DNA of 64,000 nucleotides from Leucoraja erinacea (Eukaryota): positions 5,518,001 through 5,582,000 of the forward strand of contig NC_073391.1 of the NCBI RefSeq assembly GCF_028641065.1, given 5' to 3'. The position numbers were made by a program, and so were the translations under genes. The notes beneath the pieces are model-generated. The model was not told the origin of the DNA, made no database searches, and saw only the letters and a list, made by a program, of their open reading frames with translations. How positions within the stretch are numbered: position 1 is the first letter of the stretch; every line of letters begins with the position of its first letter. Below are positions 4,678 to 58,320 of the stretch, one piece after another.

Positions 4678-6110
4678 GTAAGTAAGTAAGTAAGTTTATT
4701 GGCCAAGTATTCACATACAAGGAATTTGTCTTGGTGCTCCGCCCACAAGTAACAACATGACATACAGTGACAGTTACGGATGACTCAGAAAACACTAAAC
4801 ATTAATAATAATAAAACATTAATGATAAAACACAATTGATCAACTATGTGAACCAACAAAATACCAGATCAAAGGGAGGCTACAGATTTTTGGCTGTTGA
4901 GTAGAGCAACTACTCGTGGATAAAAACTATTTTTATGTCTGGCTGTGGCAGCTTTGACAATCCGGAGTCGCCTTCCAGAGGAAAGTGATTCAAAGAGTTT
5001 ATGGCCAGGGTGAGAGGGGTCAGAGATGATCTTGCCCGCTAACTTCCTGGCCCTTGCAGTGTACAGTTCATCAATGGAGGGAAGGTTGCAGCCAATAACC
5101 TTCTCTGCTGATCGGACGATTCGCTGCAGCCTCCAGGTGTCGTGCTTGGTGGCTGAGCCAAACCAGACCATGATGGAGAAGGTGAGAACAGACTCTATCT
5201 TGGCCGTGTAGAATTGGACCAGCATTGCCTGTGGCAGATTGTGCTTCCTCAGCTGCCGTAGGAAGTACATCCTCTGTTGTGCCTTTTTGACTGTGGAGTC
5301 GATGGTAGCCCCCTACTAAGGTCCTTGGAGATGATGGTTCCCAGGAACTTAAAAAACTCCACAGATGTGTGCGGTGAGGGGAGGGGGAGCTCTCCTAAAG
5401 TCTGCTATCGATTCCACTGTCTTAAGAGCATTGAGCTCTAGGTTGTTGCGTCGGCACCAGGACGCCAGCTGTGACACCTCCTGTCTGTAGGTAGATTCCT
5501 TCCCATCCTGGATCTGTCCAATCAGGGTTGTGTCATCCGCAAACTTGAGAAGTTTGACAGAGGTATCTGTGGAGGTGCAGTCGTTGGTGTAGAGAGAGTA
5601 GAGGAGAGGAGAGAGTACACAGCCTTGCGGTGCTCCTATGCTGAGCGTTTGCGCATCCGAGATGTGCTTTCCCAGTCTCACATGCTGCTTCCTGTCTGTC
5701 AGGAAGCTGGTGATCCACTGACAGAGGGGTTCAGGCACAGTCAACTCTGAAAGTTTGGAGTGTAGTAGCTCTGGCACAATGGTGTTGAATGCAGAGCTAT
5801 AATCAACAAACAGGATCCTCGCATAGGTCCCCTGGCGGTCCAGGTGCTGTAGGATGAAGTGCAGGCCCAGGTTGACTGCATCATCCACAGATCTATGGGC
5901 CCAATATACAAACTGCGGAGGATCCAGCAGGGAGTTGGTAATTATTTTCAGCCTGGCAGGCACAAGCCTTTCGAGTGTCATCATGACTACAGAGGTCAGT
6001 GCGACAAGCCTGTAGTTATTAAGACAAGTAATCCTTGCCTTTTTGGGTACAAGGACAATTGTGGAGACTTTGAAGCAGACATGGACTGTACATGTTTGCA
6101 AGGACTGATT
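4678..6110 (-). mobile_element. Rex1/Babar-type LINE, 5'-truncated, RT domain frameshifted
   Basis: ORFs 5349-6134 ([34 protein letters not shown]) and 4869-5270. (TTAC)n tail. Confidence 0.88.
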
Positions 6111-6365
6111 AAAAATGATGCAGATGTTTCTCATTTATAAATGGTGCGGAGCACACAAGGTAATATGCAAGTTTCAGCTCAGGAGAACACAGATAGGCGG
6201 CATTTCGGGTTGGGACCCTTCTTTAGGCTGATTGTGGGAGCTGGAAAAGAAAGCAGGAGGAGAGGCAGGACATGACAAAATGTGGCTGAACCTAAACCAA
6301 CACAGGTGTGAATTCATTAATAGGCAGATGGTTGGACGAAGGCCAGAGATGAAAAGATAAGTGTG

Positions 6366-8745
6366 GAGTCATACAGTGTGGAAACAGGCACTCCAGCCCA
6401 ACTTGCCCACGCTGACCAAAATGCCCCATCTACACTTTTCCCATCTACCTGCATTTGACCCATATCCCTCCAGACCTGTCCTATTAATCAGGTAACAAAA
6501 GCCTTGTCCATATCCAAATGTTTTTTAAATGTTGTGTTTGTACGGTGCCCCAATTACTTCCTCTGGCAACTCGTTACATATACCTACTACCTTTTGTGTA
6601 AAAATATTGTCCCTCAGGTTCCTATTAATACTTGTCCCCCTCACCTTATGCCTATGCCCTCTAGTTCTTGATTGCTCTACTCTAGGTAAAAGGCTCTATT
6701 TATTACTCTCATGATCTTATACACCTCTATAAGATCACCCCTGATTCTCCTGTGCCCCAAGAAATAACGTTCTAGCCTACCCAGCGCTCCCTATACCTCA
6801 GGCCCTCGAGTCCTGGAAACATCTTTGTAAATCTTTTCTGCACCCATTCCAGTTTATCAACAGTGACACTGATCAAAACTGCACACAATGCTTCAAATAT
6901 GGCCTCACCAATGTCTCATGCACAATTGTGCCATGACCTCCCAATTTCTATACTCTTTACTCTGACTGAAGAAGGTCAATTTGCCAAAAGCTTTCTTTAC
7001 CTGTGACGCCACTCTCATGAAATGATATACCTGCATGCCTAGATCCCTCTGCTTTACAACACTAGATCCCTCTGCTCTACAACACTAGATCCCTCTGCTC
7101 GACAACATTCTCCACAGCCCTGCCGTTCACTGTGTGGGTCCTTCCCTGGTTAAACTACCCAAAATGCAACACCTCGCCCTTCTCGATAAAACTCCATCAA
7201 CCATTCCTCAGCCCACCTGCCCAACCGATCAAGATCCTGCTCCAATTTTTGACATCCATCTTCACTATCCACAATATTACCACTTTAGTAAGAAAATTTA
7301 CTAATCATGCCTTGTACATTCTCATCCAAATCATTGATATAAATGGTAAACAGCAATGGCCCAGCACAGAACCCCAAGGTACACCACTGGTCACAGACCT
7401 TGAGATGAAAAACAACCTTTCACCATGACCCTCTGCTTCTTTCAGTGAAGCCAATGTTCTATCCTGTCAGCAAGGTCTCCTTGGATCCCAGGTGATCTAA
7501 CCTTCCACAGCAGCGTATCATGCAGACACATCAAATGCCTTGCTGAAATCTATATACATGTCTACAGCTCTGCATTAATTACCCTTTTTGGCCACAGCTT
7601 CAAATAACTCAATCAGATTCTTGAGGCACGATCTCCCCATACAAAACCATGCTGACTATCCCTTATCAACCTTGTCCGTCTAAATGCAAGTTTATCTTAT
7701 CGCTCACAATGTTCTCTAATAAATTTCTGACCACAGGTGTTGGACTCACTGCCCTATAGTTCCCAGGCTTCTCCATGCAGCCCTTCTTAATTAATTTCCC
7801 ACAAATGTCCTTGGATATATCTGATAATGGCTGGGAGATTTGACTACCTTCATACATGTTAGGATGACCTCCTTGACTATAACACTGACTGACCTCAAAT
7901 ACTTCCATTGACTGTCCAAGTTCCCCAATCTTCATGTCTTTCTCCATGATAAAAAACAATAGAAATACTCATTGAGGACATTGCCGATCTTCTGAAACTC
8001 TGCACAGCTCTGATTCCTGAGATATCTCATTCTCTCCCGATGTTAGGATGACTTCCTCTATCTTGCTGTGTCTGCTCTCACTAGCTGTGGCACTCAGAGT
8101 ATCCAGTACTACCCTGGGGGTCCTGCTATGTAGCCTTTGACATAACTCCTTCTACTCATTTTTGAGTACCTCATTCCTTTTGCCACCTATGCCATGCATG
8201 ACTTCCTACTGCTCACCCTCTTGCTTGAAAATGCAGCCGCCCTGAGACATCCTGGACCTTGGCACCAGGGAGGCAGAATATTATCCTGGAGTCTCGACTG
8301 CTGCCGCCGAATCTCCTGTCTGCACCCCTAACTAAAGGGTCACCTATCACTAAGCCTCTGCCTGACAGTACCCTCCCCTGCTGAGCCTCAGAGCTAGGCT
8401 CGGTGCCACTGCTTTGCCAGGTACTGCTGCTCAACTTTGATATGTCAACCTCCCCCACAGCACCCAAAAGAGCAGACCTGTTATGAAGAGGGGTGGTCAC
8501 AGGGGTCACCTGCACTCCAGTTTTATTCCCTTTCCTCTGGTCACCCACTTTCTCTCTCCCTGGACCTTGGACATGACAAACTCACTCTATGCCTTATCAA
8601 GAAGCTATCGTTCTCCCGGATGGCAACTCCAGTCCCTAATGCCTTCGTTAAGGAGCTGCACCTGGACACGATTCCCACAGGTGTAGTTATCTGGGACACA
8701 AGCAGTTTCCTTGTTTTCCCACATCAGCATTTTCCCAGTTGTGAA
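6366..8745 (-). mobile_element. Decayed CR1/HER1-type LINE (3' tail, RT, and an esterase-like ORF1 remnant)
   Basis: PGNYRAVS and VIGDPLVRGADRRF...CLPGAKVQDV remnants. The 3' tail is shared with the SINEs. Confidence 0.75.
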
Positions 8746-9166
8746 TTTTGAAGCTCAGTGGAAGGACAGGGGAGGGGGGAAATATGTGTGAGTTCAGACG
8801 GGGCAAAGCGGAGAGAGGCAGGGTGAATAGAAGTGGGGTTATAATGGAGAAGAAGGGAGAGGGGTTGTGTTATGGAGTTACCTATAATTGAGATTTCAAT
8901 ATCTGTAACCTCCCTTTGATCTGGTATTTTGTTGGTTCACATGCTTGATCAATGGTGTTTTATCATTAATGTTTTATTATTATTAATGTTTAGTGTTTTC
9001 TGAGTCATTCGTAACTGTCACTGTATGTCATGTTGTTACGTGGGAGGAGCACCAAGGCAAATTCCTTGTATGTGAATACTTGGCCAATAAACTTACTTAC
9101 TTATTTACTATACCATTGGATTGTAAGCTAACCAAGCAGAATATAAGGTGTTTTGCCAGTTTGCAT

Positions 9167-9214
<48 letters not shown>
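9167..9214 (+). repeat. (GACA)n microsatellite
   Basis: Read directly from the sequence. Confidence 0.95.
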
Positions 9215-9404
9215 TGGAATCAGGCCCTTCGGCCCACACCAACCATTGGGCACCCATTCACACTAATACTATTTTATCCCAATTGTACATCCACCTCCTG
9301 CACACAAGAGGCAATTTACAGAGGCCCAATTGACCTACAAGCCCGCACATCGTTGGGAAGTGGGAGGAAATCAGTGCACCTGGAGGAAAACCATGCACTC
9401 CATA

Positions 9405-9745
9405 TAACCATATAACCATATAAGCATATAACAATTACAGCATGAAAACAGGCCATCTCGACCCTTCTAGTCCGTGCCGAACACATAATCTCCCCTAGTC
9501 CCATATACCTGCACTCAGACCATAACCCTCCATTCCCTTCCCGTCCATATAACTATCCAATTTATTTTTAAATGATAAAAACGAACCTGCCTCCACCACC
9601 TTCACTGGAAGCTCATTCCACACAGCTACCACTCGCTGAGTAAAGAAGTTCCCCCTCATGTTACCCCTAAACTTCAGTCCCTTAATTCTCAAGTCAAGTC
9701 CCCTTGTTTGAATCTTCCCTGCTCTCAGTGGGAAAAGCTTTTCCA
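9405..9745 (-). mobile_element. CR1/HER1 LINE 3' end with (ATATGGTT)n tail, nested in a SINE
   Basis: RGNFFTQRVVAVWNELP...LDSYM. Near-identical to 27085-27540. Confidence 0.8.
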
Positions 9746-10632
9746 AGGGCGAACGTGCAAACTCCACATAGACAGCACCCAAGATCAAGATGGAACCCGA
9801 GTCCCTGATGCAGTGAGGCAGCAGCTTCGCAACCTGTGCCACCCTATTAGAATGACAACATTTATTAATTGAGCAATTTTCAATACATGTCTTCTTGGTA
9901 TTGGAAATTAAAATATTTGCCTTGTAGTTTAATTTCCACAAAAAAACATAACTAAGGCAATTAGCTTGAATTTCATTGTAAATAAGTATCATTTTATGGA
10001 GGAAGATAATGATACATCAGAGGAATGCAGATACATGATCCTCCTCCCTTGCTTCTTTCTCTTTCACCTTGTCCCAAATCCTCTTTCATTCTCATAATTG
10101 ACACCATTATTCCTTTCTTTAGTTTCCAAATATTTGCAGAACACCAAATAAAGGTGATGAATGATGCCGAATCATCATTTTTTTTCTTTTGTGTTTTCTC
10201 CATCACACCGGTTCATAAAGATTATAAATGCACTTAGACAAGGCAGGTAATAGCTCAGCTCAGAAACGGTTTTGAAATTTGACCCTTAGTCTGACACATC
10301 ATAATTTTAAAAGCCTTTTAAAGCTAAAGAGAATATTTTTTTTTGGTATAGTCAACATAATTACAGCATTCAACAAAATGATGTCTGCTGCTGATTTTTT
10401 AATGGTAAAATTTAATTTCTGAGTAAAACGTTATCCCTGCAATTCTGCGATGCTTATTCCAATCTTATGCCTCAAATGGCCAAACCTTTACAGAAATGTA
10501 ATTAAAGAAGCTGGACATACTCTTTCCCCTTTCCTGTAGATTATCTAGGAATTCCATCCAATTTTTCCCCGAGAGCTCATCAAAAATTAAGCATCTTTAT
10601 TTCTACACACAAGCTTTTTAGAAAACGTGAGG

Positions 10633-17008: not shown

Positions 17009-18385
17009 GGTTCAAGTTCAAGTTCAAGTGAGTTTATTGTCATGTGTCCCTGTATAGGACAATGAAATTCTTGCTTTGCTTAAGCACGCAGAAAAAAATA
17101 GTAAGCATTTACTACAAAACAGATAAATGTGTCCATATACCATGATATAAATATCTACACACATGAATAAATAAACTGGTAAAGTGCAAATAACAGAAAG
17201 TGGTTATTAATAATCAGAGTTTTGTCCGAGCCAGGTTTAATAGCCTGATGGCTGAGGGGAAGTAGCTATTCCTGAACCTGGTTGTTGCAGTCTTCAGGCT
17301 CCTGTACCTTCTACCTGAATGTAGCAGGGAGATGAGTGCGTGGCCAGGATGGTGTGGGTCTTTGATGATACTGCCAGCCTTTTTGAGGCAGCGACTGCGA
17401 TAAATCCCCTCGATGGAAGGAAGGTCAGAGCCGATGATGGACTGGGCAGTGTTTACTACTTTTTGTAGTCTTTTCTTCTCCAGGGCGCTCAAATTGCCGA
17501 ACCAAGCCACGATGCAACCGGTCAGCATGCTCTCGACTGTGCACCTGTAGAAGTTAGAGAGAGTCTTCCTTGACAATCCGACTCTCCGTAATCTTCTCAG
17601 GAAAGTAGAGGCGCTGATGAGCTTTTTTGATAATTGTGTTAGTGTTCTCGGACCAGGAAAGATCTTCAGAGATGTGCACGCCCAGGAATTTGAAGTTCTT
17701 GACCCTTTCAACCATCGACCCATTGATATAAATGGGGCTGTGGGTCCCCCTCCTACTCCTTCCAAAGTTCACAATCAGTTTCTTGGTTTTGCTGGGGTTG
17801 AGGGCCAGGTTATTGCGCTGGCACCATATGGACAGTAGCTCGATCTCTCTTCTGTACTCTGACTCATCCCCATCAGTGATACGCCCCACAATAGTGGTGT
17901 CGTCAGCGAACTTGATGATGGAGTTCACACTGTGGTTCGCTACGCAGTCATGGGTATAGAATGAGTACAGCAGGGGGCTGAGCACGCAGCCTTGAGGTGC
18001 TCCCGTACTGATTGTTATTGAGGCTGACACATTTCCACCAATACGAACAGACTGTGGTCTGTGGATGAGGAAGTCGAGGATCCAGTTGCAGAGGGATGCG
18101 CAGAGACCCAGTTCTGCGAGTTTGCTAATCAGTTTGGAGGGGATGATTGTATTAAATGCCGAGCTGTAATCAATGAATAACAGCCTGACATATGAGTTTT
18201 TGTTGTCCAAGTGGTCCAAGAGCAGAGTGGAGGGCCAGCGAGATCGCATCCACCGTTGATCTGTTGTGGCGGTACGCGAACTGCAGTGGGTCCAGGTTTT
18301 TGTCGAGGTAGGAGTTGATTTGCTCTATGATCAACCTCTCAAAGCACTTCATCACCACTGGCGTCAGTGCCACTTGTCGATAGTC
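17009..18385 (-). mobile_element. Rex1/Babar-type LINE fragment
   Basis: ORFs 17554-18249 ([28 protein letters not shown]), 17214-17765 and 18170-18415. (TTGAAC)n tail. Confidence 0.88.
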
Positions 18386-37834: not shown

Positions 37835-39418
37835 GTGGCTTCATGGAAGGAAGCAGAGGGTGCTGGTGGAAGGTTGATCTTTGGACTGGAGGCCTGCGAC
37901 TGGTGGTGTGCCTCAGCGATCGGTAACTTGAGTGTGTAGTTTCAATGATTTGGATGAGAATGTCCAAGAAACGATTAGTAAGTTATCAGATGATGCTAAA
38001 ATAGTTGATATCAAAGACAGTGAACTTGGTTATCAGAAATTCCAGCAGTATCTGGATCAACTAGGCAAATGGGCTAAGGAATGTCTAATGGAGTTTAGTG
38101 CAGATAAATGTGAGGTGTTGCATTTTGGGGATTCAAACCGAGGCAGGACATTCACTGCTAATGTTATGGGGAATGTTATGGGGAATGGTATGGGGAATGT
38201 TATGGCGAATGTTATGGCGAATGTTAAGGGCCCGAGGAGTGTTGTAACATGGAGGGATTAGGAGAACAGGTACATGGTTCCCTGAAGGTGATACCAAGGT
38301 GATAGATTGGGTGGTAAAGTAGGGTTTTGGCACATTGTCCTTCATCATTCAGGGTATTAATTATATAAATTGTAACGTTATGTTACAGTTGCACAAGACA
38401 ATAGACTATAGACAATAGACAATAGGTGCAGGAGTAAACCATTTGGCCCTTCGAGACAGCACCGCCATTCAATATGATCATGGCTGATCATCCCCAATCA
38501 GTACCCCGTTCCTGCCTTCTACCCATATCGCCCTGACTCCGCTATTTTTAAGAGCCCTATGTCTTGAAAGCATCCAGAGAACCTGCCTCCACTGCCCTCT
38601 GAGGCAAAGAATTCCACAGACTCACCACTCTCTGTGAGAAAAATTGTTTCCTCGTCTCCGTTCTAAATGGCTTACTCCTTATTCTTAAACTGTGGTCCCT
38701 GGTTCTGGACTCCCCCAACATCGGGAACATGTTTCTTGCCTCTAGCGTGTCCAAGCCCTTAACAAACCTATATGTTTCAATGAGATAACCTTTCATCCTT
38801 CTAAACTCCAGAGTGTACAAGCCCAGCTGCTCCATTCGCTCAGCATATGACAGTCCCGCCATCCCGGGAATTAACCTTGTAAACCTACACTGCACTCCAT
38901 CAATCGCAAGAATGTCCTTCCTCAAATTAAACATTAGACATTAGACATTGACATAGACATTAGACAATTAGCCATTGGAGAGGCCGTGTTTGGAGTATTA
39001 CATTGTTTCAGTTTTGGCCACCCTCCTATCAAAACGATGACATTAAGCTAGAAAGAGAGCAGAGAAGATTTATGGGAATGTTACCATGACTCAATAGTCT
39101 GAGTCACAGGGAATGGTTGGTCAGGATATGACGATCCCTTGGAGCACAGGGTGGTGATTTTATAAAAGGTGTATAAAATGTCGAGGGGAATAGATAGAGT
39201 GATTTTACAGAATCTTTTACGCAGCGTGGTAGTATCATGAACCAGATGACATAGGTTTAAGGTGAAAGGGAAAAAAATTAACAGGAACCCGTGGGGCAGC
39301 TTTTCCACTCAGAATGTGGTGGATGTATAGAATGAGCTGTCAGAGGGGGTAGTTGCGGCATGTACAATAGCAACTTTTAAAAACACTTGGACAGGTACAT
39401 GGATAGGAAAGGTTTAAG
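37835..39418 (+). mobile_element. CR1 LINE RT fragment with an antisense CR1 copy nested at about 38400-38930
   Basis: WLHGRKQRVLVEG, SKLSDDAK and KCEVLHFG. The nested ORF is 38557-38934. Confidence 0.78.
38160..38226 (+). repeat. 12-bp tandem repeat x5.5 (AATGTTATGG(G/C)G) inside a CR1 fragment
   Basis: Read directly from the sequence. Confidence 0.9.
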
Positions 39419-40125
39419 AATGTAATATTGAAGCTGCAATTTTAATTACTCCTTTTCATCTTCAATTTTATTCCAGTACTTGACCAAGTCCAAACCCATT
39501 GGGCACGTCCCCCAAAGCAATATTCCACCACTCACTCATAGCCCCCAACTGCACAGGCATGGTTGACGGGTTCCCGTCGTGAGGCCTGAGATCCCCGTTA
39601 TGCCGCGGGTGACTGCAACCCTCCCCCAACTGCGTAGATATGGCCGGCAAATGGGAGCCGACTGCAATGTTCCTAAAGAATAAAATGGCAATAACTTGTA
39701 AATAATAAGATCAATGTGAACGTATCTCACTCTCCAGTCTCTTCAGTCTCCTATTTCCATCCTTCATTATCCTCTCTCTCCACACCCTCCACCAACCCTC
39801 CTCTGTTTCCTCCCCTCACCCCTTCCCTTCCCTCCTCTCTCTTCCCCTTTTCCTCCTCCATTATCTTGCCATCCCTCTTCCTACCCCTCTCCTCCACCCC
39901 CCTCATCTCCCAGCACTCCCTCCCCCTCCTCTTCTTTCCCCTATCCTCAGTCACTCTCTCTACCCCCTCCATAACCACTCTCCCCTCCCTACCCTATCCT
40001 CTCTCTCTCTCCCCCCTCCTCCTCCCCCCCCTCCTCCCTCCCCCTTACCCCTCCCCCTCCCCCTCCCCACCTCACCCTCCCCCTCATCTCCCTCTACCGC
40101 CCTCTCCGCCACTCTCCCTCCTCAA

Positions 40126-40228
40126 CTCCCCAGGATTTATAAACCACCGCCGACCCTGGTTTCTCCACCACGTCGGCGATGAAGTTGTACTTGAGGCGGG
40201 GGCTGTGGGGGGGCACGAATGGCTGGGC
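40126..40228 (-). pseudogene. HTRA2: Captured fragment of an HtrA serine protease gene (HTRA2-like exon 1 3' end)
   Basis: Translates [30 protein letters not shown] (frameshift) ILG, versus human HTRA2 [28 protein letters not shown] recalled from memory. Confidence 0.8.
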
Positions 40229-40720
40229 CGAGCGGCCTGGAGCTGGAGAGGGGGAGAGGGGGAGAAGCCGAGGCAGTTGGAGCCAATCAATCGACCCCAC
40301 ACGTGGGACCCGGACCAATCGGACGTTGTGCGGGAGGTCGGAGAAAATTAATGGGGGGGGGGGGGGGGGGGGGGGGGCGGCGTCGGAGAATTCCCCATAT
40401 GTGGGACCCGGATTAATCGGGCATCGATCAGTAGGTCGGAGCCAATCAAGCGACATTTGTGGAAGGGGGCCCGCATCGGCGCTCCCCCCACGTGGGAACC
40501 GGACCAATTGGGCATCGAGTGGGAGGTCACTTTTCCCTCCCTATCCCCTCTCTACCCCCTCCTCTCCCTCTATCCCCCTGCTCCCCCCACTCCTCACCTC
40601 CCTCTATCCTCCCCCTCCTCCCCCACTCCTCACCTCCCCCCTTACCCCACTCCCCCCTCCCCACCTCACCCTCCCCCCTCATCTCCCTCTACCGCCCTCT
40701 CCCCCACTCTCCCTCCTCAA

Positions 40721-40749
40721 CTCCCCAGGATTTATATGTAAACCACCGC
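40721..40749 (-). pseudogene. Second partial copy of the HTRA2-like exon end
   Basis: GCG GTG GTT TAC ATA TAA ATC CTG GGG AG|TTGAG = AVVYI*ILG(R), followed by the same G-rich sequence as the first copy. Confidence 0.7.
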
Positions 40750-41763
40750 ATATTTTTATGATACTGACTGTAAAGGGAAATTCATTTTGTTGTCTCTAAT
40801 TGAGACAATGACAATATATTTGAATACAATACAATACAATCCCACCCACCCCCACAATGAAAATCGCAATGTTTATTTAAAAATTAAATTCTCAATGAAA
40901 ACTGTTTTTTCTTTAAAATAACCTAAACACAATTTTAGCTGTTAAAGAAAACAGAAGAATTTGATTAAAACCAATTTTTTTTATTAGAATAAAATCAATG
41001 TGAATGAAAATCACAATTTTTTTTAATGTAAATGAAATTCGGGTACCCATTGTGATGTCATTGTAGTGTCGAAGGCAGCTATGCAAGTGGAAAAGTAGTT
41101 TTGTAAAGTGTTTTTTTGTAAAGTTTAAAATGTCAATAACGTAAAATATACCATCAATCTGAATGACTTAGCTAATGCACACCGCAGGACAATGGTGAGT
41201 AAGGTGGGCCAAAAATTGTAGCGCTATCGTTTACCGTTTTTGTAGAGTTTTGGGAAATCATGTACAAGCAAACAAACAAACAAACAAACAAACAAACAAA
41301 CAAACAAACAAACAAGATGAAAGTTTTAGTAATATATAGATATCCTTTAACTTCATTTACTTGTGACCAGCTTCTGTTCACATCATTGCACAGGCTGTGA
41401 ACAAACTAATTTTAAACTGAGTAAAAGCATTTTTTTTCTTACAATGTGAGTAAAGATTGCCATTTACCTCCCATGGCCTTTGTCGTCTGATATGGTTATG
41501 TGCCGATGAGCCTGGAAATGCACGACCATGCATGTATGACCTAGGTATGGAGCAAGTCGGACACCTGAGATAATTATTCAGGGTGATTTCCAGGCTCAAT
41601 AGTTAAAAGCGATGAATGCAGTCCTTTCACAGTACATTTATCTGCCTCTGTGTGTCTTACCCAACCTCTAATTACAGTCTTTGAAATCCCACGGTAACTT
41701 TACTGTTTTCATCAAGTTTTCATCATATCTTCATCAAGCGCCGAACTAATAACCATCACCTGA

Positions 41764-42170
41764 AGAGCCTGTTCCACTTAAGCTATTTTTTGGTGACTGC
41801 CGGCGACTGTCATAGTCATAGCAGATCACCGAAAAAATGGTGACTGGACTCCCATTCGACATAAAATTTGAAATAGAATCATTACTTTAACAACACAAAT
41901 AAACAAAGTCAGCACCGGCGACAACCTACGTCACCTGGCGACAACTACGACAGCACCTACGTCAGGAGAAGTCAAGCTACGCTCATTGGCATCAAACCCA
42001 CTGTCGCTGACTGTCTCCGAAAATTTTTCAACATATTGTAAATCCAGCGGTGACCAGAAGGACGCTATGAATCTTTGGGCGACTGAGGATAAGACTCACG
42101 GCCATACAGGCAACACCCCGGCAACCATGCTGGCAGTCACCTAAGAAATCGTCTAATTTTGACAGGCCCT
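41764..42170. mobile_element. Harbinger-type MITE, subfamily 2
   Basis: AGAGCCTGTTCCACT...GACAGGCCCT with TSD TGA/TGA. Confidence 0.8.
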
Positions 42171-42694
42171 TGATTCTTCACTAACTACTGTTTTGCTAAT
42201 ACATGTATCAACAATGCTAGTGATACTCCCATCAGTCCTGATCTCTGCTCGTATCCCCTTATTGACCACCTGACCAGATTCATTTGCTGACATTGACACA
42301 AGTTGCTGGAGTAACTCAGCAGGTCAGTCAGCATCTCTGGGGAAAGGGAATAGGTCTCGACCAGAAAAGTCTCCCATTCCTTCTCTCTAGAGATGCTGTC
42401 TGTCCCGCTGCATTAATTTATTTCCTGGTTCACTAAAGCTATAAAATAACCTGCCTATCCACTGTCTCTGAACTCGGATTAGATATAAATACGAGAGTGT
42501 GAATGGATAACCTGGTTATAGATGCGTTAATTTTAGATCATTTTCTTAAAATGTGAATCATCTTCAGTTTCATTGGCAAGAGCCTTATTTTTCCTGTGAG
42601 TATTTTCCTGCTGAATTATTTAGCAATGGGGGAAATCATTCCCAGGCTGAAACAGATCCCATGGAGTGATGATCACATGCCACATTGGTTTGTC

Positions 42695-52038: not shown

Positions 52039-53181
52039 CAGGGCCGGCTTTAGGAGTTGCCGTGCCCAATTGGGAACAATTTTGGTGAGCCCCAGGTTCC
52101 CAGCCAAGGTCTGTAGATTCATAGAAATATAATTAAAGTCTATTATAGACTTTATATCTCTATGGTAGAATGGAAAGTAATCAAAATATGCACTTAAAAA
52201 AGTGCCTGCGACTTAATGGACCAAACAGATCTAAGCTGCATTTTAATATAAAATTGCATACATATAAGCCTACAAGTAACAAACAAAATGTGTAGATCAC
52301 CTCTGAAAAATACAAACTTACAATACCACTTGTTTTAGTGACTGTGAAATGAAAAAAAAAAGGTGATTTAATTAAATAGATCCTGGAAAACCAATAACCA
52401 TTGGTGAAAAAACAGTCCAGGCATTACATTTTGGGCTTCAGCCCCATCCTACCCTTTGGGCTTCTACCCCACCCTAACTTAGTTTTGTGTGTTAGTTGTA
52501 TGTTCATGATGTGTGTGTGTTAGTTGTCTGTGCGTTNNNNNNNNNNNNNNNNNNNNNNNNNNNNNNNNNNNNNNNNNNNNNNNNNNNNNNNNNNNNNNNN
52601 NNNNNNNNNNNNNNNNNNNNNNNNNNNNNNNNNNNNNNNNNNNNNNNNNNNNNNNNNNNNNNNNNNNNNNNNNNNNNNNNNNAGGGGAGAAAGAAGGGAT
52701 GGAGCAAATGAGAGAAGGGAAAAGAGAGAGGAAGGAGGGAGGGAAGGATAGAGAGAAGGGAGGGAGGGAAGAAGGGAAGGAGAGAAGGGAGGGAGAGGAC
52801 CGGCAGTGGGAGCGGATGCCGGGGTCTGGGCAGACGGGTGGGAGCTGAGGTTGAGGTTTGTAAACGTTGCTCCAACCCCCGGCCCGACCCTCCGTGTATT
52901 GTTCACTGCGTCTCCCCGGGGAGAGGGGGGGTGGAGCCGGGGCTGAGCGCGTGAAGCACGGCGACTGGAGGTGTGGGGGTGCTGCCGTAAGCGACAGCAC
53001 ACCCCTCCCTCCTCCTCCCTCCCCCCCCCCCCCCCCTTCTCCATTCCCCTCTCACACCCCCCCCCCCCCCCGTCTACCCCTTTCTTCCCCCTCCACCCCT
53101 CTACTCTCTCTCTGCCCCCTCTCGCCCCCATCCACCCAGGGTAGATCTACCCGAGCCGAGAGTAGATTACGGCCGGCTTTG
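52039..53181. mobile_element. hAT-type non-autonomous element (possibly composite) spanning the assembly gap
   Basis: Ends CAGGGCCGGCTTTA / TTACGGCCGGCTTTG. Imperfect 8-bp TSD GGAACAAG/GAAGCAAG. The host Penelope ORF is continuous on both sides. Confidence 0.6.
52537..52682. other. Assembly gap (146 N)
   Basis: Run of N. Confidence 1.
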
Positions 53182-58069: not shown

Positions 58070-58235
58070 AAAATACCGGAGTAACTCAGTTACTGGAGTA
58101 ACTGGCAGCATCTCTGGAGAGAAGGAATGGGCGACATTTCGCGTCGAGACCCTTCTTCAGATTGATGTCAGGGGAGTGGGCAGGGCAGAGATAGAATGTA
58201 GTCGAAGACAGTAAGACTGGTGGGAGAACTGGGAA

Positions 58236-58271
<36 letters not shown>

Positions 58272-58320
58272 TGGAGAGAGAGGGAAAGCTAGGGCTATTT
58301 GAAGTTAGAGGTCAATGTTG
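58070..58320 (-). mobile_element. Penelope-like element 3' end with poly-G tract
   Basis: Same architecture as 31615-32017. Hammerhead-like CTGAAGAAGGGTCTCGACGCGAAATGTC on the minus strand. Confidence 0.7.

What the first reader, a model, noticed from the sequence alone, without database searches (positions are those of the whole stretch)
39479..41340. Helitron that has captured an HTRA2-like exon-intron junction
Seen: Helitron-type ends (A|TC..., a 3' hairpin, degenerate CTAG|T) enclose a segment encoding [22 protein letters not shown], the N-terminal signature of the HtrA protease domain; VVY is HTRA2-like. A duplicated partial copy reads AVVYI*ILG-AG|TTGAG, an exon end with a decayed GT donor, and both copies continue into the same G-rich sequence. 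Established: Helitrons capture genomic, intron-containing gene fragments, best documented in maize, bats and insects. Inference: this is DNA-level gene capture in a cartilaginous fish, which could have spread HTRA2 fragments genome-wide.
Basis: partly seen in the sequence, partly recalled or inferred. Interest (0 to 1): 0.8.

Follow-up and report, generated by a model that had tools for sequence, protein, structure and literature searches.

The report
Stray HTRA2 exon fragment, not Helitron
A broken, unexpressed, low-copy scrap of the skate's own HTRA2 protease gene (the end of exon 1, cut off exactly at the exon boundary) sits among ordinary repeats, and nothing shows that a Helitron transposon carried it there.

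Summary
The HTRA2-like piece is real. Minus strand 40282-40139 matches the little skate's own annotated HTRA2-like protein (XP_055487789.1, E 3e-10) and solved HTRA2 structures. It shares skate-specific residues (LPRLL, HSPRLKY).

Homology stops exactly where exon 1 ends in about 40 vertebrates, inside the Arg codon after ...VVYIEILG. So it is an unspliced copy, or one joined at the donor site. A second partial copy at 40749-40652 is confirmed: 1 substitution in 92 aligned bases.

The piece is dead. The first 71-78 codons are missing. Both copies share a TAA stop, and copy 1 has a 4-bp deletion. No further HtrA exon lies in the 64 kb, and RNA depth is about zero.

The Helitron reading fails.
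- No hairpin+CTRR+T end exists anywhere in 39000-42000.
- The claimed 3' end is an (ACAA)13 microsatellite.
- The "element" is a mosaic of repeats with very different copy numbers around a low-copy core.
- The core and the right junction are present in a related species, so no empty site was seen.

Genome-wide spread is not supported.

Other first-reader "Helitron" notes exist for this genome. The one that was followed up also found Helitron delivery not shown. HTRA2 was not noted elsewhere.

Verdict: an ordinary unprocessed pseudogene fragment, vehicle unknown.

The parts
40126..40282 (-). HTRA2 exon-1-derived fragment, copy 1. It covers roughly codons 72-119 of the skate HTRA2-like protein plus the degraded IEILG+AG exon end. 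The exon end (AG) is at 40127-40126. A 4-bp deletion follows VVY, and the TAA stop is shared with copy 2.
   Evidence: tblastn of XP_055487789.1 (P0127) gives 40282-40139, 32/51 identical, E 3e-10. Bamboo-shark exon 1 (P0001) gives E 7e-10. PDB HTRA2 gives E 6e-5. Sequence read.
39736..40125 (-). G-rich (C-rich on + strand) low-complexity sequence that follows the exon end in copy 1. Putative intron-1-derived sequence, untested. It begins TTGAGG, where a donor would read GTGAGG.
   Evidence: many overlapping short-period arrays. The junction position is inferred. Similar CT-rich arrays lie elsewhere in the window at 53004-53121 and 58231-58294.
40721..40749 (-). Exon tail, copy 2. It reads AVVYI*ILG+AG, keeps the ancestral frame with TAA in place of the Glu codon, and is truncated on its upstream side at 40749/40750.
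   Evidence: Alignment A1, identity counts, sequence.
40530..40720 (-). G-rich low-complexity sequence that follows the exon end in copy 2. Its first ~70 bases are near-identical to copy 1; further on it is diverged by slippage.
40276..40530 (.). About 2.7 tandem units of a ~91-98-bp repeat, each with CACGTG and two CCAAT/ATTGG motifs. It is interrupted by a 25-G run at 40353-40377. GC is 0.635 and CpG observed/expected is 0.87. Depth is single copy. It abuts the upstream break of the HTRA2 piece.
   Evidence: the repeat finder families D3 and D8, TRF, composition, depth 35.8 in bin 40338-40504 against 21-35 for single copy.
39503..39735 (.). Left-flank interspersed repeat of high copy number: summed depth about 130,000 against about 22 for single copy in 39503-39669, falling to about 8,000 beyond. 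It has an internal 81-bp-spaced duplication. It ends in a 47-bp AT-rich module that is also found twice in the right flank.
   Evidence: bins; record 2 is a 999-bp contig of which only 39507-39735 fits; variants at 39563, 39608 and 39614 appear in 45-115 contigs. Family D9. Module alignments.
40750..41263 (+). Right-flank AT-rich multi-copy sequence with uneven abundance: about 293,000 in bin 40672-40838, then about 5,600, 10,600 and 47,000 towards the 3' side. The same AT-rich module lies at 40963-41014 and 41119-41163.
   Evidence: (bins; indels at 40901-41170 seen in 7-45 contigs per run).
41264..41315 (+). (ACAA)13 microsatellite that ends the multi-copy stretch. Single-copy DNA starts at about 41324. 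Reading this as a non-LTR-type tail is an inference.
   Evidence: TRF. Depth falls from 47,338 to 34.5 at 41340, and contigs of organism A (X1) and organism C (X6) start at 41324.
39045..39415 (.). Separate dispersed repeat to the left of the finding, truncated at 39415/39416. Not part of the claimed element.
   Evidence: Other copies in the window at 46689-46319, 36492-36315, 22653-22450 and 6856-6502. A loose-end consensus continues differently after 39416 in 914 records of X3.

Best explanation
This is a dead, unprocessed pseudogene fragment: about 150 bp of the 3' part of exon 1 of the skate-lineage HTRA2 gene.

It was copied as DNA, or at least without splicing to exon 2, together with what lies beyond the exon 1 donor site. 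It then landed in a repeat-rich stretch next to a CpG-rich 95-bp tandem array.

Later a local duplication copied the last 29 bases of the exon piece plus the adjoining G-rich sequence to the other side of the array.

It encodes nothing and is not transcribed at a detectable level. The flanking multi-copy sequences are unrelated interspersed repeats that inserted around or next to it. One of them looks like a microsatellite-tailed non-LTR element.

Shown: parentage, the exact stop at the exon boundary, the disabling lesions, isolation from other HtrA exons, the local duplicate, low copy number of the core, mosaic flanks, and presence in a related species.

Inferred: that the G-rich flank is intron 1, and that the vehicle was an ordinary segmental duplication or repair-templated copy rather than a transposon.
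For: - Parentage. The best match is the little skate's own HTRA2-like protein, with shared lineage-specific residues (LPRLL, HSPRLKY; sharks have DSPRF[RK]F). PDB HTRA2 scores E 6e-5.
- Exon boundary. About 40 exon-1-only ORFs stop right after ...EI[VL][GD]R. The skate and shark proteins continue R-HP[FL]SGRE. The window continues AG|TTGAGGAGGG instead.
- Lesions. TAA for Glu in both copies, a 4-bp deletion in copy 1, and residues 1-71 of P0127 absent.
- Isolation. tblastn with the skate, four shark and two teleost HTRA2 proteins finds only 40282-40139; all other hits have E above 0.7. No GNSGG or TNxHV motifs. No Trypsin or PDZ Pfam hit in 147 stop-free minus-strand segments from 16197-40286. 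Nothing with E. coli DegP/DegQ/DegS.
- No RNA. Depth is at most 0.21 across 40004-40504 in an oligo-dT run, of which about 5% was read.
- Copy number and mosaic. Single-copy depth is about 21-35. The core bin 40338-40504 is 35.8, the exon bins are 191-379, and the flanks range from 1,400 to 293,000.
- Age. A 404-bp contig of organism C at single-copy depth spans 40160-40573 with 12 substitutions, and the same 41324 boundary is seen in C.
Against: - The exon-bearing bins are 8-17 times single copy, so a few more copies elsewhere cannot be excluded. This includes the parent gene or genes.
A composite unit that moved as a whole is therefore not excluded.
- One joint (39545 to 39902 with 27 other letters between, in a contig of about 13 times depth) hints that the left repeat and a CT-rich array co-occur elsewhere. 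If so, the G-rich flank would be repeat-borne rather than intronic. That match is only 24-30 letters of low-complexity sequence, though.
- The parent gene's intron 1 was never seen.
Confidence: 0.68

Rival explanations
1. The whole mosaic (about 39416/39503 to 41323) is one mobile or once-mobile composite carried by a non-Helitron element. One example would be an unspliced antisense read-through or 5'-transduced transcript retroposed by the machinery of the (ACAA)n-tailed non-LTR element in + orientation. Another would be an uncharacterised element with internal low-complexity arrays that picked up the HTRA2 piece.
For: - Multi-copy sequence lies on both sides of a low-copy core.
- There is a sharp repeat-to-unique boundary right behind a microsatellite tail at 41316-41324.
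- Depth rises towards that tail (5.6k, 10.6k, 47k), as in 5'-truncated LINE families.
- A 47-bp module is shared by the left and right flanks.
- The exon piece is antisense to the tailed element, which would explain the lack of splicing.
Against: - No convincing target-site duplication. Only a 7-bp GTAATAT at 39419 and 41329, and it is not adjacent to the tail.
- The flanks differ in abundance by 10- to 100-fold, so they are not one family.
- No second copy of the composite was seen.
- The core bin is single copy.
Confidence: 0.15
2. Helitron gene capture: a non-autonomous Helitron spanning about 39479-41340 captured the HTRA2 exon 1/intron 1 junction by rolling-circle read-through or end bypass.
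For: - A gene fragment that keeps an exon boundary sits inside a repeat-flanked segment whose right edge (41324-41340) coincides with the claimed end.
- Helitrons are known to capture such fragments (PMC4778049).
Against: - Defining features tested and not met: no 3' CTRR, and no palindrome 10-20 nt upstream of any CTRR+T in 39000-42000 on either strand.
- The nearest inverted repeat is weak, AT-rich and about 90-100 nt from the claimed end.
- The 3' end is a microsatellite.
- The 5' TC is unspecific: ATC occurs once per 70 bases.
- There is no RepHel ORF. The only large ORFs with Pfam hits in the window are reverse transcriptases.
- The exon piece is low copy.
- Chondrichthyan repeat landscapes are dominated by non-LTR elements and SINEs (PMC5381603).
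Confidence: 0.04
3. RNA-level origin. The junction sits at the donor site because exon 1 was spliced (or template-switched) onto another, G-rich sequence, and the chimeric RNA was reverse-transcribed into the genome. The G-rich flank would then not be an intron.
For: - Homology ends exactly at the splice donor position.
- The donor-like TTGAGG is weak evidence for an intron in a GA-rich context where TGAGG recurs.
- CT/GA-rich arrays are common in this window.
Against: - No poly(A) tract or target-site duplication in the sense orientation.
- The fragment starts mid-exon next to a tandem array.
- No known exon-like partner.
Confidence: 0.08
4. It is a live exon: the true first coding exon of HTRA2, or an exonised piece of another gene on the minus strand.
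For: A 137-codon stop-free frame contains it.
Against: - There is a frame-breaking 4-bp deletion and a stop at the conserved IEIL.
- The N-terminal targeting and transmembrane part is missing.
- No downstream HtrA exons lie within 40 kb.
- RNA depth is about 0.
- A separate annotated HTRA2-like gene sits on another contig.
Confidence: 0.02

Closest known systems
Unprocessed (duplicated) pseudogene fragments, or gene relics, left by segmental or repair-templated DNA duplication
   Same: It carries parent-gene homology that stops at an exon boundary without the next exon. It has disabling lesions, no expression and low copy number, and it is older than the split from a sister species.
   Different: Only about 150 bp of one exon survives. 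It is re-duplicated locally and abuts an unrelated CpG-rich tandem array. The duplication tract and the parent intron were not seen.
Helitron gene-fragment capture (maize Helitrons; Helibat/Helraiser in Myotis, PMC4778049)
   Same: A genomic, intron-containing gene fragment lies between multi-copy sequences.
   Different: No 5'-TC/CTRR-3' ends, no subterminal hairpin, no evidence of an A|T target, no family of copies sharing the ends, no RepHel ORF nearby. The 3' edge is a microsatellite.
LINE-mediated transduction or chimeric retrocopies
   Same: A microsatellite-tailed, apparently 5'-truncation-graded repeat directly adjoins the duplicated exon tail.
   Different: No target-site duplication was found. 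The flanks are several families. The fragment is antisense to the tailed element. None of this was testable genome-wide here.
HTRA2/Omi serine protease (parent gene; skate XP_055487789.1, human structures 1LCY/5M3N)
   Same: It matches the N-terminal signature of the mature protein: the region of the AVPS-type IAP-binding motif through [18 protein letters not shown].
   Different: No catalytic triad, no PDZ domain, no mitochondrial targeting or transmembrane part. It is not a protease gene.

Membership tests
Helitron (rolling-circle transposon) | 3' terminus CTRR (CTAG in Helibat) joined to a host T | tested here: not met
   The claimed end reads TTTTAG|T or TATAG|A. The only CTRR on the + strand in 41150-41360 are at 41159 and 41172, about 150 bp or more inside. 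Feature definition from PMC4778049.
Helitron (rolling-circle transposon) | Short palindrome or hairpin about 10-20 nt upstream of the 3' end | tested here: not met
   No stem of 6 or more pairs followed within 2-15 nt by CTRR+T in 39000-42000 on either strand; shuffles average 0.5. The nearest inverted repeat, 41210-41242, is 11 nt, 82% complementary, AT-rich and about 90-100 nt from the claimed end.
Helitron (rolling-circle transposon) | 5' terminus TC joined to a host A, no target-site duplication | tested here: inconclusive
   One ATC at 39458, 21 bases from the stated start. ATC occurs once per 70 bases, so it carries no information. The multi-copy sequence starts near 39503-39507, not there.
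Helitron (rolling-circle transposon) | Other genomic copies share both termini | tested here: inconclusive
   The flanks are multi-copy but 10- to 100-fold unequal in abundance, and the 3' edge is a microsatellite. Shared termini as such could not be examined without the assembly.
Helitron (rolling-circle transposon) | Empty A|T site in a relative | tested here: not met
   Organism C (2-3% diverged) has a contig across 40160-40573 and the same boundary at 41324. No bridging empty-site contig was listed. More distant skates were not examined.
Helitron (rolling-circle transposon) | RepHel protein (autonomous copies only) | tested here: not met
   ORFs of 150 aa or more in the window give only RVT_1. 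The 147 minus-strand segments give no Helitron helicase or Rep hit. This is not required for a non-autonomous copy.
HTRA2-derived sequence | Significant similarity to HTRA2, better than to HTRA1/3/4 | tested here: met
   PDB HTRA2 E 6e-5 against HTRA1 0.018 and HTRA3 0.086. Skate HTRA2-like E 3e-10.
Functional HtrA protease gene | Catalytic His-Asp-Ser protease domain and PDZ domain in the same gene | tested here: not met
   Searches find no further HtrA sequence in the 64 kb.
Unprocessed pseudogene fragment | Homology ends at a native exon boundary without the following exon | tested here: met
   The exon 1 end after ...EILG+AG is inferred from about 40 exon-1-only ORFs. The window has AG|TTGAGG there in both copies, and no HP[FL]SGRE follows.
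Unprocessed pseudogene fragment | The sequence beyond the boundary is the parent gene's intron | not testable with these tools
No tool here reads the skate assembly.
Unprocessed pseudogene fragment | Disabling lesions and no expression | tested here: met
   Shared TAA, a 4-bp deletion and a missing 5' part. RNA depth at most 0.21 in one run, partly read.

The most novel reading that the evidence does not exclude
The low-copy core (HTRA2 exon-1 end plus the CpG-rich 95-bp array with E-box and CCAAT motifs) is a portable first-exon/promoter-like module. It would be carried in a handful of copies (the 8-17 times depth) by an uncharacterised composite element of skates. That would be a case of DNA-level gene-fragment mobilisation in a cartilaginous fish by something other than a canonical Helitron.
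Probability: 0.1. Interest if true: 0.45.

Novelty: new member of a known kind. Interest (0 to 1): 0.12.

Why it matters
It matters little biologically. It is one more dead gene scrap in a repeat-rich vertebrate genome.

It is useful as a caution. A|TC and ...TAG|T "ends" occur by chance every few hundred bases, and they should not be read as Helitron termini without a subterminal hairpin and shared copies.

Two practical points follow.
- Annotation pipelines should not call this ORF an HtrA-like gene.
- The little skate's annotated HTRA2-like model is itself low quality and truncated, on a small separate contig. The true HTRA2 locus of this species deserves a look.

If the fragment did turn out to be carried by a mobile composite, it would be a rare documented case of DNA-level exon capture in chondrichthyans.

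Tried and rejected
- The search for homologous proteins with the 137-aa ORF (residues 88-137) was blank. The length limits exclude full-length kin, so this says little.
- Pfam on the ORF gave no family. The fragment lies upstream of the Trypsin_2 domain.
- The search of protein representatives with the 40-aa piece gave a single hit, the bamboo-shark exon-1 ORF.
Neither the shark locus nor the skate parent locus could be read, so the parent intron 1 stays unseen.
- Rfam, ARAGORN and the promoter/terminator scan on the region gave nothing relevant.
- tblastn and an HMM of E. coli DegP/DegQ/DegS against the window gave nothing. Power for decayed vertebrate exons is low.
- The joint 39413 to 42304 (skipping 2890) in all three DNA runs looked like an empty site. 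I rejected it. The shorter side is only 23-24 letters, and both repeats share CATGGATAGGAAA-like words (loose-end consensus at 42304). The skipped stretch also contains single-copy DNA at 41340-41673.
- The 7-bp GTAATAT at 39419 and 41329 was considered as a target-site duplication. I rejected it as too short and not adjacent to the tail.
- Paper searches for Helitron with Leucoraja or with HTRA2 found no papers.
Full report
**What is there**

The minus strand of 40094-40507 is a stop-free frame of 137 codons. Its C-terminal part reads ...[46 protein letters not shown], then KSWGVEE.

Against all solved structures, the only meaningful hits are HTRA2 chains: E 6e-5 to 1e-4, residues 94-123 of the ORF against the mature N-terminus [29 protein letters not shown]. 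HTRA1 scores 0.018 or worse and HTRA3 0.086. Pfam finds nothing, because the piece lies upstream of the protease domain proper.

The whole-library search with the 40-residue piece returned one protein, a 134-aa exon-1-only ORF of the bamboo shark (GCC46483.1). A profile of such ORFs then retrieved the little skate's own [quoted passage not shown] (XP_055487789.1, 266 aa, on a 63.5-kb contig) and four shark HTRA2 proteins.

The skate protein aligns to 40282-40139 with 32/51 identities, E 3e-10. So the fragment descends from the skate-lineage HTRA2 gene, not from a foreign or ancient source.

**The exon boundary**

Of the 42 exon-1 ORFs first retrieved from many vertebrates, nearly all end ...VVYIEI[VL][GD]R. 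A stop or a few read-through residues follow directly. The spliced skate and shark proteins continue R-HP[FL]SGRE. Exon 1 therefore ends inside that Arg codon (AG|GT..).

In the window, copy 2 reads GCG GTG GTT TAC ATA TAA ATC CTG GGG AG | TTGAGG (40749-40715). Copy 1 reads the same with four bases missing after GTT TA (40150-40120). Homology to HTRA2 thus ends exactly at the conserved exon end, and no exon 2 sequence follows.

One caveat applies: TTGAGG in a GA-rich run is weak evidence for a decayed donor.

**It is dead and alone**

- Both copies carry TAA in place of the Glu codon of IEIL.
- Copy 1 has a 4-bp deletion as well.
- The first 71-78 codons of exon 1 (targeting sequence, transmembrane segment) are absent.
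- tblastn with seven vertebrate HTRA2 proteins finds nothing else in the 64 kb; all other hits have E above 0.7 and are not collinear.
- Motif scans for GNSGG, TNxHV and others are empty.
- Pfam on 147 stop-free minus-strand segments between 16197 and 40286 gives only reverse transcriptase.
- Bacterial DegP/DegQ/DegS give nothing.
- In an oligo-dT RNA run of the same species, depth over 40004-40504 is at most 0.21. About 5% of that run was read.

**The local duplicate**

39956-40150 and 40548-40749 are 82.8% identical overall. The first 100 alignment columns from the shared start have 91 matches, 1 mismatch and 3 indels. Beyond that, the low-complexity sequence has slipped.

Between the copies lies a tandem array of about 95 bp units (40276-40530). 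It has CACGTG and CCAAT motifs, a 25-G run, GC 0.635 and CpG observed/expected 0.87.

**The Helitron test**

By the published definition, Helitrons have 5'-TC and CTRR-3' ends, a short palindrome just upstream of the 3' end, and insertion between A and T (PMC4778049). The 3' features are absent here.

- No hairpin followed within 2-15 nt by CTRR+T exists on either strand of 39000-42000; shuffles average 0.5.
- The claimed 3' end is TTTTAG|T or TATAG|A, directly after (ACAA)13.
- The only nearby inverted repeat is weak, AT-rich and about 90-100 nt from the claimed end.
- ATC occurs once per 70 bases, so the 5' "A|TC" carries no weight.

**Copy number and relatives**

Contigs of three DNA runs from three coded organisms were laid at 80% likeness or more. 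Single-copy depth in organism A (run X1) is about 21-35. The table gives the organism A values.

| Stretch | Summed contig depth |
|---|---|
| 41340-41673, 42509-42675 (single copy) | 21-35 |
| 39503-39669 | about 130,000 |
| 39670-40003 | 4,700-8,100 |
| 40004-40337 (exon-bearing) | 191-379 |
| 40338-40504 | 35.8 |
| 40505-40671 | 1,359 |
| 40672-40838 | about 293,000 |
| 40839-41172 | 5,600-10,600 |
| 41173-41339 | 47,000 |
| beyond 41340 | 34.5 |

The claimed element is therefore a mosaic of several repeat families of very different abundance around a low-copy core. It is not one family.

The 8-17-fold depth over the exon piece includes the local duplicate, any parent gene copy that fits at 80% likeness, and GA-rich runs. 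It does not show genome-wide spread.

A 404-bp contig of organism C at single-copy depth spans 40160-40573 with 12 substitutions. C's contig also starts at 41324, as in organism A. C differs from A by about 2-3% in the single-copy flank. So the structure predates that split, and no empty site was seen.

A joint 39413 to 42304 in all three runs is an artefact of short shared words between two repeats, not an empty site.

The left flank's last 47 bases recur twice in the right flank at 70-79% identity. The depth gradient towards the microsatellite resembles a 5'-truncated non-LTR family. That reading is an inference only.

**Conclusion**

The observation of an HTRA2 exon-1 end with a partial duplicate is real, and its stop at the exon boundary is well supported.

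The best explanation is an ordinary unprocessed pseudogene fragment of the skate's HTRA2, locally re-duplicated and surrounded by unrelated repeats. The copying vehicle is unknown. Plain DNA duplication or repair-templated copying is most likely (about 0.68 for the overall reading). A non-Helitron composite or transduction event is possible (about 0.15). An RNA-level chimera scores about 0.08, Helitron capture about 0.04 and a live exon about 0.02.

**Context and housekeeping**

- Chondrichthyan genomes are dominated by non-LTR elements and SINEs (PMC5381603).
- No paper links Helitrons with HTRA2 or with Leucoraja erinacea.
- Earlier notes of this scan list seven first-reader "Helitron" readings in this genome. 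The only one followed up (s1-878675) likewise found Helitron delivery not shown.

Noticed in passing
window 40276-40530: A single-copy tandem array of ~95-bp units, each with an E-box (CACGTG) and two CCAAT/ATTGG motifs. GC is 0.635 and CpG observed/expected is 0.87. It looks like a CpG-island or promoter module abutting the HTRA2 piece. Its origin (HTRA2 promoter or not) and methylation state are unknown, and no RNA was seen in one run.
   Followed up: partly
window 40353-40377: A run of 25 G inside the first array unit. It was masked as a repeat by the reads tool. A related species' contig spans it with gaps, so it is probably real but variable in length.
   Followed up: no
protein P0127 (XP_055487789.1), not in this window: The little skate's annotated HTRA2-like protein is flagged LOW QUALITY. 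It is only 266 aa, degenerates after about residue 200 and lacks the catalytic Ser region. It sits on a 63.5-kb contig. Either the true HTRA2 locus is poorly assembled or this is another decaying copy. A full-length model (over 380 aa) would have been outside the search's length limits.
   Followed up: partly
window 38334-39001: An extremely abundant repeat: summed contig depth 4-14 million against about 22 for single copy. It is also heavily represented in RNA reads on both strands (thousands-fold depth).
   Followed up: no
window 42295-42415: A high-copy repeat with a 43-nt inverted repeat (42312-42354 / 42373-42415). It gives a sub-threshold Rfam hit to MIR1507 (29 bits against a gathering score of 73), almost certainly a chance match to the hairpin. 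Many RNA reads show a 'goes back 41' joint there.
   Followed up: no
window 39674-39720, 40963-41014, 41119-41163: A ~47-bp AT-rich module (TAAAG..TAAAATG.CAATAAC..GTAAA..ATCAAT.TGAA) occurs three times in the same orientation in otherwise dissimilar multi-copy flanks. It may be a shared LINE-type 3' module or a poly(A)-signal-like tail.
   Followed up: partly
window 5349-6134 and 17214-18324 (minus strand): Reverse-transcriptase ORFs (RVT_1, E 3e-27 and 4e-22): LINE fragments. They are the only sizeable protein-domain hits found in the window.
   Followed up: partly
window 53004-53121 and 58231-58294: Further CT/GA-rich low-complexity arrays, 72-78% similar to the one beside the HTRA2 piece. 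Such arrays are common here, which weakens any argument that the G-rich flank must be an intron. The N run at 52537-52682 was left untouched.
   Followed up: no
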